64,000 bases of DNA from Styela clava. Its lineage: Eukaryota. The DNA lies in contig NC_135252.1 of NCBI RefSeq assembly GCF_964204865.1, positions 5,456,001 to 5,520,000 on the forward strand, in the 5' to 3' direction. A model generated the notes under the pieces. That model saw only the letters and a list, made by a program, of their open reading frames with translations. It had not been told where the DNA came from and ran no database searches. Within the stretch, counting starts at the first letter, position 1. Each line of letters starts with the position of its first letter. Shown here one piece after another: positions 47,818 through 54,500 of the stretch. The translations under genes were made by a program, and so were the position numbers.

Positions 47818-50800
47818 AGATTCAATATTCCTGGCTGGGCTAACCTGCGCGAATCATGGCAGGTGGGGTGGTTGGTATGGGATGACTCCATGACGGACAA
47901 ACTTCAATTTATAATCTGTCATGTTAGCATTGCAAGGTCATTTCTCTCATCACTTGTGTTAAAACGAAATGTAGAGAGTTTAGATTGGAAGGTAATTTCG
48001 GAGTGTTTGCTTTTCATTGAAGTAGTTGCCATATTTTACCAAAACAAAAATCTTTTTTTTTCATTACACCAGTGACTGCTGCACATCCTCAATAATGCTA
48101 TGACAATAAAAAAAAAAAAATTCTGAGGAAACATCTAAGGTTAAAATACTTAGCTCGTCTTTATTTCCGTTTTGTCAAGTTTGATGGTAAGTATTTTTTA
48201 ATAAATTCTGCTTTTGAATTCAAATGAATGGGTAGGTTTCCGTGGATTGATTTCACTAACAAGTATAAAGATTGGGTACAAAAACCGCGCATTTTGCGTA
48301 GTTCTCTGCAACGCCGAGATAAGAGGGGGATGTGTATTCATATTGCCGGTTTCGCAATTCAAACGTGCAAATTCAGTCAAAATTTGCAATAAATTTTATC
48401 ATTGTTGAGTCAGCGAATTCCAAAACTCTGTAAAATACCATAAAAATTTACTCAACCTTTTTTGTCGAATGTATTTTTATCCCCAGTAAAGCATTCAAGT
48501 GGAAAAACATCAGCAATCGGCTTTCCTGTTTGGCCGAAATTCTATATGCTCTATCCCTTGTCGATACGCGCTTTTAACCGTAAGGATTTTTGGTTTCCGC
48601 TTTTTTTTCAAAACTAGCTTGCGCAGCATTTCTCAAATTTCAAATGATTCCACCCAAAATATCATTTCACTAACTAGGGATGTCGTTTATTAAGGCAATA
48701 TTTGTACTTCATGAAGATTATAAGATATAAACATATAAAATAACATGTGAAATACTTTGGTATGAATTTGATCACCCCATATTTTTTCATCATTGATCGA
48801 TGTGTAAGCAAGTGAATCATTCTTGACAATGCAATTTATAACGTCTGATTGGTCTATAGTCCAACATTTTTTTATTGATGCACATTGGTCCTAGGACACT
48901 TTTGAATCCATTTTCAGAGAATACTTATATTGCAGATTATTGAAAAGAGCTTGCACTACACTATTCTTCCAATCATAAGTTACTTTCTTTGGAATTTTCA
49001 ATTTATTTGCTTTTGATCACGTACAGACAGTCTGCGCGAAAATTTTTCCTGTGTGTCTAGACTTGAAGAACTCATGATTCACGATTCTCAACAGTTTACT
49101 CATTATTGCTAGTCAAAAATAATCATCCTTGGCCCTGTTCAGATATTGAGAAAATGTACATCCACTCAAAATTTTGAATATCACCCCTTTTCAAGTTTCT
49201 TTGTGTCGCAATAAAGCTACAAGTTTTAAAAAGGGGACTGGTAATACATAAAAGTATTTTTGCGGCAGCTTCCACGTGCGAATCTGAAGCAATAAGTTTG
49301 CAAACATGGAGCAAAGACTTGCAGTTAGATTACACATTTTCTAGTTCCCATAGCTTTCCACAAAAGTCACGAAATTTGAACCTGAGAATAACAAATGCAC
49401 ACTCAGAATACTGATATTGTTACATCAAGAATTCAAAGACCGAATATTTCACAATTTCGATAAAATGTGCGCAGACAAATCAAATATTTCGAAACATTTG
49501 ATGATTTCACATCTAGTTCATTTATTGTATATTATTCTAAAATCTTGGAATAAGTTTCTCTAATATATTTTCCCAGGCAGCTGTAAATTAAATAAAAGCC
49601 AATAAATTTTTACGACCTTAGCAAATATTGCAGTCGACCTCAATTTTGTTATTTTCATTTGTATATTAGCCGTAAATGCATTGTGCGATTCCAAACAATT
49701 GTTAATGAATGAATTAATTGTGTTTACGATCCTATCGGTCGATCAAACAATAAAAAACATTAGCAACCGAGCGAAAGATCATGGGAAATCAAAGAATGAC
49801 TCCAACGTGAGCGACCTAATTTAATCTATGTGTGAAATTCTGAAAGTTTGATCCAACAATAGCTTCGATGTTTTACAACTTACGTTTCCCGTCTTATGAT
49901 GCTGTTATCGACGCTTGATGCTTGTCAAACCGTTTAGTACATTTTGAAAATAATTTAAAATTGTGAAAGGTTCAGAAGTTGATTTTTCAATGTGAGATGA
50001 TTTTATCTAAACACGAGTAATACGTAAAAGCGTTGTACAGTATTCCAAATCAAATATATAACAAAATCAGTGATATAAACAATTTATACACTACCACGGC
50101 ACATCTGTATATTCTTTAACTAATTTTGATGCAAAAACACTAAATGGTAGGAAATTCTTTCAACTTTTATATCATCAATGTCGATTCCAACGGATTTTAC
50201 ATTTATTTTACTTTCTATTCAGAACACAAAACATTCATTATTCATTATGGATTTACTCTGGGGAATTCACGGTTTTAAAGATTCTACGATCAACGGAAAA
50301 TATCACTTAACTGTATATTTTTCTTTCAAAAAGTCCTTGAATGAATATAACGAAATCTGTTTGAAAGGCATTCTTTGCTGCAATTGAGCAAAGGTAGACA
50401 TCTCTTGCACGCCATGATTAATGCAAGTCGATATTAGTAAATTTAAACCGTCAATATACTGTATTTGTAACATATATATTTCACCGACAACGCATTTGGC
50501 GGATCGATTTTATTAATCCAACTATTAATTATTATTTAAAATGGAAAAATAAAAAAAAACTAGTGTAGTAAGGTGCCAGGGATGTCTTCATAATGGTTTC
50601 TGCATCTAATAACTCGAACGCAGATTTTGGTACAAAATAATGTATTATAGATAGATATCTTCAGGAAAGGGTGTATGATGTACATTTACTTTTTGATCAC
50701 GCAAATGTTATCTGATGCTTTGTATATATTTTCTGAAAATGAGTTGAGTGATGATGCATTGTCAGAATTTTGATTCATTTGTTATTCGTTGGACGTCACT

Positions 50801-51555
50801 ATATATTGTCGAACGTCCATAGGAAGCAATTGAGCAGCGGGGAGACTCGTTGAGAAACTATTTGTCTGGAAATATTTATTTGACGCACAAAAACTGACTT
50901 TTGGCTGAATTGTATTCACTCAAAATGTTATGGTCTCTTGCAGAAATCCTTTCACCAGAGTGCCATATTTAGACACAAGCAATGTGAGGCGTATACTTTT
51001 ATCTTTGATGAGGAAGACAGACCATCCGCGAAGCATTAACGACGTTCAGCCTATGTTAGACGTATCGAATCATTCCCACCGAGGATTAACGGGAGAACAA
51101 GGAGAATAAGTAGGGTGTGATTTCAAAAGAGAGGAAATTACGGCGGTCCTAAGTGATCGCCGAGGCGTAAAAGTTTTAGACAAATGTTATACCAATAAAC
51201 AGCTGAGGCAGATATAAGAAAAAAACCAAAGAAAGAGAAAAAGGGCTTTCTCTTTATAGAAAGGGTCCGGGCTATCACTCCATTAGTTCGTCTTAGTTGT
51301 GCGTTGGCAAAGGTGAGGCGCCGGGTTCGTAAGGCCTCTCTGTTGCTGACGAAAGCTTTTCTTCTAATTTGCGGTATCAAAACTTTTTTCTATTGCGCCA
51401 GTCAACCAAGAAGATCTTTAACAGTAGCTGCATTCCTTTCGAGCAAGCGCATTGAGTGCAGACAGTTTCTGCCAAAACGCTTGCAGAGGCGAAGAAGCGG
51501 ATATTTTGCGGGAACGTGCGCAGGGTGACCCCCACTCTGTCGACAACGTTCGATA

Positions 51556-51592
51556 GGATTATACATGTCTGCACAATCGGGCATGTATAGCC
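51556..51592 (+). promoter_or_regulatory. Stem-loop over the collagen start codon, resembling the vertebrate fibrillar-collagen 5' stem-loop
   Basis: ggattatacatgtct-gcacaatc-gggcatgtatagcc: tatacatgtct pairs with gggcatgtata (11 bp, two G-U pairs). One AUG lies on each arm (51565, 51583). Confidence 0.65.
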
Positions 51593-54500
51593 AAAGAATG
51601 ATGGACGGACGACGCTGGCACCTAGTGCTGGCACTGATTTTTGGCGTGTTTCTTACTACCGCACATGGACAAGGTCAGTAACTTTTAATATTGAATATTT
51701 CGCACAGTAAATGTAACTTTCGACAACCAATAATTTCGAAAATGGAAAAGTAGGAAATATTCATTCTTTTTGTCGGTATTGAAGTAGGTTTGTATTTACG
51801 AATGGTATACTACAATAAATATTAGAGTTAAAATACGTTGGATAAAAGCACAACCCTAGCCTAAAAATTATTCATCTAGTATAGTTCAATAAACGCATCC
51901 AAAAATACCTTGGCTAGTAAGAACAATATGGATAGAGCGCGACTCGAAGTTGCGTTCCATCTCTTGTTCTTATTGTATGCAAAAGCAATTATATTTTTTA
52001 TAGTTATATTTTTAACTCCCTCGAAAGCTTTCTGAACCACGATATCAGCCTGATTCTTATTCTTAAATTTGTGTTTTTGTGTATAACAGTGCATTTTCTG
52101 TGCAAAGTTGATCAGGGAAAAATATTGTAGTTTGTTTAATTTTGATAGTTCCAGCACATTTAACATCATGGCATACTAACAAACATTCTTTCAAACTGCT
52201 TCTTCGATCGAACTATGTGGTCTGCAGTCTTGCCCGGCGATTCACAGATCTCGTTCGTGTTATTTGTGATTTTTTCTTCTTTTTATGTTTTTTTTCTCCA
52301 AAATATCAGTATCATATTGTATATAATGTTGTACTGTACAATTTGATGTTGTACTGTTCAATAAAGTGCATTTGATATTGATATTTTGACAATGTAACCA
52401 TCACTTAGCTTCCGTCATTTACCGATTATTTTATGCATAAAATTAACACTGGCTATTGCGCTTTATATGTCGTCCGTCTTGTTGTTGTCTTAAATGTTTT
52501 GGTAATGTTCTATACACAGATAATAATAACATGATCATACTATGGGTGTTCTTATTGAGAATAGTAAATTATGGTGATCATGTTTTATTATCCCTCATCC
52601 ATTGCATGCGCTTTTCTTATCTCGCTAAGTAACCGATGCATAACCTCACGGAACACCGTAATTTTCGACATCAATTCCAACCATCTACCCAATGTTAGTT
52701 TAATCCAAAATATCTAGATGTCGATTCGTGGGCTATACATGAAACGCGATGCAGTTTTGGTTTCCATGTATGGTTCACGATCGATTGAGCTCGAAATAAC
52801 GTCAACCGTTTGAGGAAATCTCCATATTTCATGGTCTGTTTAACTTTGCACAGAAAGCACATTTTTTCTAAAAAAAACGTTGCGATAAAGCTGACAGAAA
52901 TGATCTTGCAGATACTGAGAGGTTCCGCTCGGTCGGAAGCTGAAAGAATTTCAACTATTTCCGCCGCAATTGACGGCGGTTTCGCCCAAAAGGTCAAATG
53001 CGGCGAGGATGTAGTTTGCCATTCACGTGATTGTCTGCAAAATCCTACGCCATTTTCTCATCCTTCCTTTCATCTTATATCCCGCTAAGTTCAATCACTT
53101 GTCTTCTATAGTGTAAATAATGCGTTCAATCTTCAAACAAAACAATTACGCGACGACATCTATTTTGTTTGCCTACATTTAAACACGAACTGCGATTTTG
53201 CCGGGCAAGCGTAACCACAATATTCGACCGAATAAGCGTTACGGTTTGAAGAATGCTTGGCGAAAATGAATCCTATTTAGGTACCTCAATAGAAAATGAA
53301 AAGCACTGCACCAGAAATGGCGTCACTTTCGCGAGTGGGGACGTTTTTAAACCATTTCCTTGCGAGGTGTGCGTATGTGTTAACGGCGAGCTAATCTGTG
53401 ATGAGGTTCAATGCGACAAGCTGGATTGCCCCAACCCTGTTGTACCAGAAGGAAAATGTTGTCCCGTTTGCGCCGGAGGTAACTATCCGCTCAACATTAT
53501 TAGCTTTTGTAATTATTGAACTTTTCACTCTACTCTTATCTTTTCTATCCTATTTTGCGCAATCGCGTGAGTGGCATAGAGTCATCTAACTTTTGTTGGC
53601 TGATTCGATTTATTTCAAATAACCTTTCTTCAGTGCAATATTCAAGGTAATTTATAGTAACGTTTGTCAAAGCATTACAAATGTCCACAGTCCCCTTAAA
53701 CCTCGTTTGATATTAGAATGAACGCATCTGACAATTGCTTTTTATTTTGTGTTTTTCAGGACAAAAAGTGAGTGCTCGTCAGAAACAATTCTCTTTATCC
53801 AGTATCATCTATCTTGTAGCGGCATATCAAGCTTTCCATCGCTGAAAATCAATTTCCACATATCGTTATAGTATTCCTGTTTTGTTGTCTAATTTAATAA
53901 GGAACAAACCACAAGTACTATCGAAAATAGGGCATAAACGAAGTGACGTTTCTACACCTACGTTATATGATTTGAAAAATGCAAACACAATCTTTTATCG
54001 GCCATGAATTTATATTAATATAACATTCGCACCTAATCAATACGGTTTTAATTAAGTTTCAAGAAAGCTAGTATATTTACATTATGGTCGTCCATTGACA
54101 TTTTCTGAGTGTGAGGAACATCGTTAAAAAATGCATCTATATAGTTAATGAAATGACGTAATAATAAAATAATCACTGAGTGATTTAGAAATAATTCAAC
54201 AAATTATTTCCGAAATGTTAGAAAATAGAGAACAAAAAGTGATTTTTAATTTTTTCAGGGACAAAAAGGAGAACCTGGCTCTCCGGGAGATACGACGGTA
54301 AATGCAAAAAATCATTTCATTTCATTATAACATTTAATCTCCAGAAAATGGTAGAAATAGTCAATTTAGAATGACAATTCATATGTGTTTTTCATCACGT
54401 GCTTACAATTTATTTTTCAGGGACTTGGAATACCGGGAAACCCTGGACCAAAAGTGAGTATTATCTCAAATAATTAGCTTTGTGATGTAGTCTGGTGAAA

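What the first reader, a model, noticed from the sequence alone, without database searches (positions are those of the whole stretch)
51549..51600. Apparent homologue of the vertebrate collagen 5' stem-loop (LARP6 element) in an invertebrate-type gene
Seen: GG-AUUAUA-CAUGUCU-loop-GGGCAUG-UAUAG-CC, with an AUG on each arm. Established (sequence recalled, not looked up): human COL1A1/1A2/3A1 mRNAs have a 5' stem-loop, CAAAG-AGUCUA-CAUGUCUA-loop-UAGACAUG-UUCAG-CUUUG, that contains an upstream AUG and the start AUG and binds LARP6 to control translation. The match covers UACAUGUCU, CAUGU..AGC and the encoded start (MYS versus MFS). Differences: the two AUGs are 18 nt apart and in frame with no stop, and the internal-loop bases can pair. 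Inference: this regulatory element may predate vertebrates, and the true start is probably 51583.
Basis: partly seen in the sequence, partly recalled or inferred. Interest (0 to 1): 0.78.

Follow-up and report, generated by a model that had tools for sequence, protein, structure and literature searches.

The report
Collagen start-codon stem-loop in sea squirt
The main fibrillar collagen gene of the sea squirt Styela clava has a conserved RNA hairpin over its start codons that closely resembles the stem-loop controlling vertebrate type I/III collagen translation, so that control element may be older than vertebrates.

Summary
At 51547-51600 (+) the mRNA folds into two stems: a lower 5-bp stem, a 4+3 nt internal loop, and a 15-bp upper stem with one bulged A and a 6-nt loop. 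It scores -21.9 kcal/mol, z -5.5, and only the sense strand folds this way. All four in-frame AUGs are buried in it.

The gene is the only VWC-bearing (clade-A-type) fibrillar collagen found in Styela clava; I confirmed the genome identity. RNA-like contigs place the hairpin in the mature, highly expressed mRNA. In a diverged relative, all 31 stem bases are unchanged, while the loop and flanks differ.

The two share a 9-nt run, match at 12 of 14 and 9 of 15 aligned arm positions, and place the 3'-arm AUG at the human start codon's position. Styela also has a LARP6 gene with the long RRM loop 3 described as vertebrate-type.

Homology is plausible (about 0.6) but unproven:
- The positions matching the vertebrate internal loop, which LARP6 needs, are predicted paired.
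- The element lies at least 378-581 nt from the 5' end.
- No other tunicate, amphioxus or lamprey could be examined.
- Binding is untested.

The parts
50984..51673 (+). Exon 1 as covered by the main RNA-like contig: 5'UTR, the stem-loop and the signal-peptide coding part. It ends at a GT donor in phase 1.
   Evidence: record 1 of run X1 is 691 nt, depth 1249, and spans 50984-51674 with 3 differences, none in the hairpin. Intron depth is 46. Searches give the sequence and frame.
51187..51564 (+). AUG-free leader of 378 nt that ends at the first hairpin AUG.
   Evidence: 0 ATG against a mean of 6.9 in 5000 shuffles; P(0) = 0.0002.
51510..51618 (+). Island of exon 1 that still aligns at 80% or more with the main contig of a related species (organism D).
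   Evidence: record 16 of run X12 (depth 2824) matches only this stretch, with 14 substitutions and 1 gap. The flanks run on unlike.
51547..51551 (+). Lower stem, 5' strand (pairs with 51596-51600).
   Evidence: pair probabilities 0.97-1.0 in 60-91 nt contexts. The stem is not kept in the 174-nt fold.
51552..51555 (+). Predicted internal loop, 5' side (4 nt).
   Evidence: One base is deleted here (51554) in organism D.
51556..51592 (+). Upper hairpin: 15 bp with bulged A51558 and the loop at 51572-51577. It holds AUG1 in the 5' arm and AUG2 in the 3' arm.
   Evidence: in organism D, 0 of 31 stem bases changed and 2 of 6 loop bases changed.
51562..51570 (+). 9-nt run identical to the 5' arm of the human COL1A1 5'SL.
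   Evidence: (sequence printed in PMC11988235) compared by eye.
51565..51567 (+). AUG1, the first AUG after the AUG-free leader; A at -3, U at +4.
51583..51585 (+). AUG2, at the position that aligns with the human start codon (M-Y-S against the M-F-S read from the printed sequence).
51593..51595 (+). Predicted internal loop, 3' side (3 nt).
   Evidence: 51593 is changed in organism D.
51596..51603 (+). Lower stem 3' strand (51596-51600), overlapping AUG3 (51598) and AUG4 (51601; A at -3, G at +4).
53281..53478 (+). Exon 2, the VWC domain, phase 1 at both ends. It is skipped in the main RNA junction seen.
   Evidence: 50-58% identity to vertebrate clade-A VWC exons. One search shows exon 1 joined directly to the microexon.
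53760..53767 (+). 8-nt microexon with a CAG acceptor and GTGAGT donor. It restores phase 0 before the next exon.
   Evidence: letters following exon 1 in records of X1 and X12.
54259..54297 (+). First Gly-X-Y exon (39 nt) after the microexon.

Best explanation
This is a functional, sense-strand RNA stem-loop that buries the start codons of the Styela clava clade-A fibrillar collagen mRNA. It is most likely the tunicate counterpart, by common descent, of the vertebrate collagen 5' stem-loop. Shown: the structure is predicted with high confidence; it lies in the mature, abundant mRNA; its stems are invariant in a diverged relative; and it shares sequence, AUG placement and a two-stem build with the human element. 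Inferred: it controls where and how efficiently ribosomes start, or how the mRNA is handled, through a protein that recognises the weak, A-bulged lower half of the long stem. The candidate is the Styela LARP6 orthologue, which has the long RRM loop 3. That part of the stem aligns with the vertebrate internal loop. My odds: a real conserved RNA element about 0.9; homologous to the vertebrate 5'SL about 0.6; bound by LARP6 about 0.35.
For: - Structure and strand: -21.9 kcal/mol, z -5.5, 0 of 200 shuffles. The antisense strand is much weaker, because 4 of the 20 pairs of the two stems are G-U.
- Expression: a 691-nt contig at depth 1249 ends exactly at the exon 1 donor, against an intron depth of 46. 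A 67-nt contig (depth 2851) joins exon 1 to downstream exons.
- Selection: the dominant contig of organism D keeps 31 of 31 stem bases. The only 2 changes inside the 37-nt hairpin fall in the 6-nt loop (P = 0.023).
- Divergence around it: about 10 of 14 substitutions lie in the outer 50 nt of the island. My by-eye alignment of the next 30 upstream letters gives about 63% identity. All 3 listed substitutions between AUG1 and AUG3 change the amino acid, so the constraint is not on the peptide.
- Likeness to the human 5'SL as printed: a 9-nt run; 12 of 14 and 9 of 15 arm positions; the 3'-arm AUG at the position of the human start codon.
- Critical bases: 4 of the 5 nucleotides whose mutation abolishes LARP6 binding are present at the aligned positions. 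The aligned loop A is the one unpaired, bulged base here.
- Orthology: this is the only VWC-bearing fibrillar collagen found in the genome. Exon 1 carries the UTR and signal peptide, and exon 2 carries the VWC domain.
- Uniqueness: BLAST, a pattern search and a covariance model found only this copy. The shared pattern occurs once in the window and in 0 of 100 shuffles.
- LARP6: La-motif exon E 2e-16 to LARP6 against 1.6e-5 to LARP7. The RRM exon aligns without gaps to human LARP6 RRM1 across loop 3. PMC4615758 reports that loop as needed for 5'SL binding and as short in invertebrates.
Against: - The bases that align with the human internal loop are predicted paired (above 0.97). Opening them costs 7.6 kcal/mol. 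PMC12288881 reports that continuous hairpins without the internal loop do not bind the LARP6 La domain.
- The internal loop that is predicted here sits lower, has a different sequence and is not conserved in organism D (2 of 7 positions changed).
- One of the five critical bases differs (C to U).
- The element lies at least 581 nt from the contig start, or at least 378 nt by the AUG-free leader, against 75-85 nt from the cap in vertebrates.
- No compensatory change was seen, so the stem has conservation but no covariation support.
- Only one diverged sequence could be read in full, and the species behind the coded runs are unknown.
- No other tunicate, amphioxus, echinoderm or jawless vertebrate was available.
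- The sequence comparison was made by eye on shared positions chosen after the fact. My rough estimate is that a 9-nt run arises by chance about 1 time in 60 between two stretches of this size (inference, not a tool result).
- Pfam SUZ-C was not detected in the presumed C-terminal exon of the LARP6 gene.
Confidence: 0.6

Rival explanations
1. A lineage-specific start-codon hairpin of styelid collagen mRNA that arose independently of the vertebrate 5'SL. It would tune start-site choice or translation rate by its stability alone, or through some other protein such as a helicase. The sequence likeness would be coincidence, helped by the self-complementary CAUG core.
For: Any stem containing CAUG puts an AUG on both arms, so part of the likeness follows automatically. 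There is no internal loop at the aligned position. The distance from the 5' end is very different. Hairpins of this stability occur in 131 of 31,974 windows. No intermediate taxa were seen.
Against: The element sits in the orthologous gene, at the same place relative to the start codon. It shares a 9-nt run and 21 of 29 arm positions, has the aligned AUG as the start-codon equivalent, and keeps 4 of 5 LARP6-critical bases. The stem sequence is invariant where a purely thermodynamic role would tolerate compensatory change.
Confidence: 0.27
2. A palindromic DNA element in exon 1, such as a binding site for a dimeric transcription factor, conserved at the DNA level and incidentally able to fold as RNA.
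For: It is an inverted repeat with two CATG cores 18 nt apart. From memory, each 10-mer is one mismatch from the p53-family half-site consensus; I did not test this.
Against: Four of the 20 pairs of the two stems are G-U, which pair only in the sense RNA. The antisense fold is weak and different (-12.7, z -1.58, against -21.9, z -5.5). The element lies about 580 nt inside a highly expressed transcript.
Confidence: 0.06
3. The conservation reflects a constraint on the encoded N-terminal peptide (an extension of the signal peptide), and the fold is incidental.
For: AUG1 is in frame with no stop, and by the scanning rule it should be used.
Against: All 3 listed substitutions between AUG1 and AUG3 in organism D are non-synonymous (Q to R, S to P, Q to L by my translation). 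No synonymous site in the stems changed.
Confidence: 0.03
4. A chance hairpin with no function.
For: About 0.4% of 52-nt windows fold as well.
Against: 31 of 31 stem bases are kept in a relative whose flanks are 20% or more diverged. The chance of that is 0.001 at 20% divergence.
Confidence: 0.02

Closest known systems
Vertebrate collagen 5' stem-loop (5'SL) of COL1A1, COL1A2 and COL3A1 mRNAs, bound by LARP6
   Same: It sits in exon 1 of a clade-A fibrillar collagen mRNA and spans the UTR/coding junction. It has two stems and an internal loop, an AUG on each arm of the upper stem, and the 3'-arm AUG aligned with the start codon. It shares a 9-nt identical run, and 12 of 14 plus 9 of 15 arm positions. 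The stem sequence is strongly conserved. A LARP6 gene with a long RRM loop 3 is present.
   Different: The aligned internal-loop bases form a weak helix (four A-U pairs, one G-U and a bulged A), and the predicted internal loop is displaced downwards. The upper stem is 15 bp against 10, the lower stem 5 bp against 8, and the loop 6 nt against 3. The two arm AUGs are in frame with no stop. The element is at least 378-581 nt from the 5' end instead of 75-85. Only one gene in the genome carries it. Binding is untested.
General start-site hairpins in eukaryotic mRNAs (structure at or just after an AUG alters initiation; helicase-dependent leaders)
   Same: A moderately stable stem (-16 to -22 kcal/mol) over and just before the AUGs, in a long, otherwise AUG-free leader.
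   Different: Such hairpins need no particular sequence. Here the stem sequence is invariant between diverged species and matches a specific known element.
Alternative splicing of the VWC exon 2 of vertebrate COL2A1 (IIA/IIB forms; recalled, not looked up)
   Same: The VWC exon directly after exon 1 is skipped in the dominant RNA junction seen here.
   Different: This concerns the side observation, not the stem-loop. Tissue and stage of the coded runs are unknown.

Membership tests
Collagen 5' stem-loop (LARP6 element) | Lies in the mature mRNA of a clade-A fibrillar collagen and encompasses the start codon | tested here: met
   Searches identify the gene. One search shows a contig at depth 1249 covering 50984-51674. 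One search places the AUGs at 51565, 51583, 51598 and 51601 inside the fold.
Collagen 5' stem-loop (LARP6 element) | Two helical stems flanking an internal loop (PMC4615758, PMC12288881, passages read) | tested here: inconclusive
   Local folds give a 5-bp stem, a 4+3 nt internal loop and a 15-bp stem. However, the loop is not at the position that aligns with the human loop, the lower stem is lost in the 174-nt fold, and all of this is prediction only.
Collagen 5' stem-loop (LARP6 element) | Nine-nucleotide internal loop with five bases whose mutation abolishes LARP6 binding | tested here: not met
   At the aligned positions 4 of the 5 bases are present, but apart from the bulged A they are predicted paired with probability above 0.97, at an opening cost of 7.6 kcal/mol. 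The loop predicted here has another sequence.
Collagen 5' stem-loop (LARP6 element) | Sequence similarity to the vertebrate element | tested here: met
   By eye against the 48-mer printed in PMC11988235: a 9-nt run, then 12 of 14 and 9 of 15 positions. The shared pattern occurs once in the window and in 0 of 100 shuffles. The pattern was chosen after the fact.
Collagen 5' stem-loop (LARP6 element) | Located 75-85 nt from the cap (PMC4813270) | tested here: not met
   The contig starts 581 nt before AUG1. The AUG-free leader is 378 nt. The true cap site was not mapped.
Collagen 5' stem-loop (LARP6 element) | Conserved across species | tested here: inconclusive
   The stems are identical in one diverged relative, and the block is present in at least four further low-depth contigs with different signal-peptide sequences. 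No covariation was seen, and no other tunicate order or outgroup was examined.
Collagen 5' stem-loop (LARP6 element) | Specific high-affinity binding by LARP6 | not testable with these tools
   Only the presence of a LARP6 orthologue with a full-length loop 3 was shown.
LARP6 (for the gene at G000:C16 about 7587336-7601083, minus strand) | La motif closest to LARP6, an RRM1 with the long loop 3, and a C-terminal LSA/SUZ-C motif | tested here: inconclusive
   La motif: E 2e-16 to LARP6 against 1.6e-5 to LARP7. RRM exon: ungapped alignment to 2mtg positions 45-93, E 2.3e-7. Pfam SUZ-C gave no hit on the presumed last exon, and the genome's only SUZ-C hit lies elsewhere. The exons were not joined.

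The most novel reading that the evidence does not exclude
The LARP6/5'SL control module of fibrillar collagen mRNA predates vertebrates. It was already present in the single clade-A collagen gene of the tunicate-vertebrate ancestor, before the genome duplications that produced COL1A1, COL1A2 and COL3A1. Its original job therefore cannot have been to coordinate the alpha1 and alpha2 chains. In Styela it survives in a 'closed' form: four base differences turn the vertebrate internal loop into a weak A-U helix with a bulged A. The tunicate LARP6, which already has the long RRM loop 3, would recognise or open this helix.
Probability: 0.35. Interest if true: 0.78.

Novelty: new variant of a known kind. 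Interest (0 to 1): 0.62.

Why it matters
The papers I read describe the collagen 5'SL as something vertebrate type I and III collagen mRNAs acquired, found in no other mRNA (PMC4615758 and PMC4813270, passages). They describe the long RRM loop 3 of LARP6 as vertebrate-specific.

A tunicate counterpart would move the origin of this antifibrotic drug target's RNA-protein pair back to the common ancestor of tunicates and vertebrates. It would separate the element's origin from heterotrimer coordination. It would also provide a natural variant in which the internal loop is closed.

That variant makes a direct test possible. If Styela or human LARP6 binds it, the current view that a continuous helix cannot bind needs refining. 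If neither binds, the loop, and with it LARP6 control, is a vertebrate addition to an older start-codon hairpin.

My full-text searches found no paper linking LARP6 with Ciona and collagen (0 papers). Searches for LARP6 with tunicate (1 paper), chordate (4) and lamprey (1) returned only titles I judged unrelated. Subscription journals and older collagen gene papers are largely outside that library.

Tried and rejected
- **Rfam.** It has no family here. The 6 weak matches in 50500-52500 were all far below their gathering scores, and none lay on the hairpin.
- **Second copy in the genome.** BLAST of the 141-nt block found only itself. So did a two-arm pattern and a covariance model built from the single sequence (150 of 1312 candidates were scored, so this is not exhaustive). 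The other two COLFI loci, both on contig C5, were not examined for start-codon hairpins of a different sequence.
- **Relatives through proteins.**
  - The big representative search with the VWC exon gave 910 hits at E up to 0.001. The 150 listed were mostly multi-VWC proteins.
  - I fetched 25 of those 150. They were vertebrate clade-A exon-2 reading frames or N-terminal fragments and contained no tunicate collagen.
  - Word searches with the exon 2 open frame and with the exon 1 open frame were blank.
  - A metagenome scan with the VWC exon matched 226 stretches to a pattern, none confirmed by tblastn.
- **Microexon.** I first read the extra letters at the exon 1 junction as a 9-nt duplication (note 2) and found no 9-nt exon. 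That reading was wrong: it is an 8-nt microexon at 53760-53767.
- **Covariation.** It could not be tested. Read laying lists only differences that reach 10% of depth, so the low-depth divergent contigs cannot be read base by base. I infer from the from_end column that differences within about 25 nt of a piece's end are not listed.
- **Supplementary files.** I did not request them. They may hold 5'SL alignments that bear on which loop U is critical.
Full report
**What is there**

The window is AT-rich animal DNA (GC 0.30-0.40). From about 51000 to its end, the + strand carries a fibrillar collagen gene:
- An exon with a signal peptide.
- A VWC exon at 53281-53478.
- Many 45, 54 and 108-nt Gly-X-Y exons, plus larger ones.
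- C-propeptide (COLFI) exons just beyond the window, at G000:C3:5522344-5523554.

The genome is Styela clava. An 856-residue single-exon reading frame from contig C4 is exactly XP_039247804.2 [Styela clava], on a contig of the same length. That confirms a lead from earlier notes of this scan.

The genome has COLFI matches at three places (7 matches). A search with this gene's VWC exon gave 27 matches at E up to 1, none near the other two COLFI loci. This is therefore the only VWC-bearing, clade-A-type fibrillar collagen I could find. Its VWC exon is 50-58% identical to VWC exons of vertebrate clade-A collagens (25 of the 150 listed hits were fetched).

**The observation**

The hairpin is real.
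- Upper hairpin 51556-51592: 15 pairs, one bulged A (51558) and a 6-nt loop.
- Lower stem: in 60-91 nt contexts a 5-bp stem (51547-51551 with 51596-51600) forms below a 4+3 nt internal loop. Pair probabilities are 0.94-1.0.
- Stability: the 60-nt element folds at -21.9 kcal/mol, z -5.5, with 0 of 200 shuffles as good.
- Strand: the opposite strand reaches only -12.7 (z -1.58, 15 of 200 shuffles as good) with another fold, because four pairs are G-U.
- Background: 131 of 31,974 52-nt windows in this window fold at -18.1 or better. Stability alone is therefore worth roughly P = 0.004 per position.

Four in-frame AUGs (51565, 51583, 51598, 51601) all lie in helices.

**It is in the mRNA and it is conserved**

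Runs of the same organism, coded A, behave as RNA.
- One 691-nt contig of depth 1249 spans 50984-51674 and stops at the exon 1 donor.
- The intron is covered at depth 46.
- A 67-nt contig of depth 2851 joins exon 1 to letters that match an 8-nt microexon (53760-53767; CAG acceptor, GTGAGT donor) followed by the exon at 54259. The VWC exon is skipped in that junction.

So the hairpin lies about 580 nt inside a highly expressed transcript. The 378 nt before AUG1 contain no ATG, against 6.9 expected (1 of 5000 shuffles had none). That marks a scanned leader ending at 51565.

In a run of another organism, coded D, the dominant contig (depth 2824) aligns at 80% or more only over 51510-51618.
- It has 14 substitutions and 1 gap.
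- Only five differences fall in the part of the piece where differences are listed: 51550, a deletion at 51554, 51575, 51577 and 51593.
- None touches the 31 stem bases of the upper hairpin, and two fall in the 6-nt loop (P = 0.023).
- The remaining 10 or so lie in the outer 50 nt.
- Beyond the island the sequences no longer align. By eye the next 30 upstream letters are about 63% identical.
- At 20% divergence, the chance that 31 bases stay unchanged is 0.001.
- The three substitutions between AUG1 and AUG3 all change the amino acid, so the constraint is on the nucleic acid, not the peptide.

At least four more low-depth contigs (three in X12, one in X1) carry the same block. In each it is followed by a different hydrophobic signal-peptide sequence in frame. 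Their stems could not be read, because differences below 10% of depth are not listed. No compensatory change was seen, so there is no covariation evidence.

**Comparison with the vertebrate element**

The 48-nt human COL1A1 5'SL ligand is printed in the Methods of PMC11988235. Pairing it by eye gives an 8-bp stem, a 5+4 nt internal loop, a 10-bp stem and a 3-nt loop. This matches the "nine internal loop nucleotides" of PMC12288881.

Anchored on the shared 9-nt run (51562-51570), the likeness is:
- 5' side: 12 of 14 positions identical.
- 3' side: 9 of 15 positions identical.
- The 3'-arm AUG (51583) aligns with the human start codon.
- The next two codons read aromatic-Ser in both.
- The review PMC4813270 lists five bases whose mutation abolishes LARP6 binding. 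Four are present at the aligned Styela positions, and one C is a U.
- The aligned loop A is the bulged A51558.

The four other differences in that segment turn the human internal loop into four A-U pairs and one G-U pair.

I did not type the human sequence into any tool, so there is no computed alignment statistic. My rough estimate for a 9-nt run between stretches of this size is about 0.016, before counting position and structure. A pattern of the shared letters occurs once in the window and in 0 of 100 shuffles, but it was chosen after the fact. Rfam has no model for this element.

**The protein partner**

The genome has a LARP6 orthologue on contig C16, minus strand, at about 7587336-7601083.
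- Its La-motif exon matches human LARP6 structures at E 2e-16, against 1.6e-5 for LARP7. It keeps F114, R121, K130, L131, T133, F135 and K139 by my numbering of the alignment.
- Its RRM exon aligns without gaps to human LARP6 RRM1 across the long loop 3.
- PMC4615758 reports that loop as necessary for 5'SL binding, 22 residues long in vertebrates and 4 in invertebrate LARP6.
- Pfam SUZ-C was not found on the presumed last exon.
- Two further LARP6-like La-motif loci exist.

I searched exon by exon and did not join exons.

**What speaks against a simple "LARP6 element"**

- PMC12288881 reports that hairpins forming a continuous helix without the internal loop do not bind the La domain.
- In Styela the aligned loop bases are predicted paired (above 0.97), and opening them costs 7.6 kcal/mol.
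- The internal loop that is predicted lies lower, differs in sequence and varies in organism D.
- The vertebrate element sits 75-85 nt from the cap, and this one at least 378-581 nt.
- Only one gene carries it.

**Which AUG**

By the scanning rule, 51565 comes first and has A at -3. 51601 has the best context and gives the most typical short n-region. All four give the same protein after signal-peptide cleavage, so the data cannot decide.

**Verdict**

- This is a real, expressed, strand-specific and strongly conserved start-codon stem-loop (about 0.9).
- It is probably homologous to the vertebrate collagen 5'SL (about 0.6).
- LARP6 binding is possible but unsupported by structure prediction (about 0.35).
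- In the library searched, no paper links LARP6 or the 5'SL with tunicates or other non-vertebrate chordates. The papers read call the element a vertebrate acquisition.

Noticed in passing
window 53281-53478 (exon 2) and the junction at 51673: In the RNA-like contigs, the dominant junction joins exon 1 directly to the microexon and skips the VWC exon. This recalls the alternative splicing of the VWC exon of vertebrate COL2A1 (recalled). Exon 2 is covered only at intron-like depth, 46 against 1249-2851.
   Followed up: partly
window 53760-53767: An 8-nt microexon with a pyrimidine tract, CAG acceptor and GTGAGT donor lies between the VWC exon and the first Gly-X-Y exon. It is needed to restore the reading frame and is seen in RNA contigs of two runs.
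   Followed up: yes
window 50984-51564: The 5'UTR is long. Two short upstream reading frames start at 51008 (33 codons, with an internal AUG at 51053) and 51184 (4 codons). A 378-nt AUG-free stretch follows. There is also a second strong hairpin at 51301-51352 (-23.0 kcal/mol) and a GC-rich 7-bp hairpin near 51521-51539.
   Followed up: partly
G000:C16:8212411-8212581 (L021) and G000:C6:11617254-11617394 (L024): These are two further La-motif loci that resemble LARP6. L021 scores E 1.3e-17 to LARP6 against 8e-16 to LARP7, so its family is unclear. L024 was read only by eye.
   Followed up: partly
window 39568, 41030, 42517: The 9-letter run that contains the microexon (its 8 letters plus the following G) occurs 7 times in the window against 1.3 expected (0 of 100 shuffles reach 7). 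Three of the copies are spaced about 1.47 kb apart upstream of the collagen gene, which suggests a tandemly repeated unit there.
   Followed up: no
window 51429-51674, runs X10, X12, X14: Runs labelled as other organisms (B, D, E) hold low-depth contigs (depth 2-3) identical to the window. This looks like carry-over between samples or mislabelled close relatives. The 'share of words' in the run search therefore overstates cross-species conservation.
   Followed up: partly
G000:C5:24289682-24291739 and G000:C5:21800758-21800859 (minus strand): Two further fibrillar collagen C-propeptide loci have no VWC exon like this gene's nearby. Their 5' ends were not examined for start-codon hairpins.
   Followed up: no
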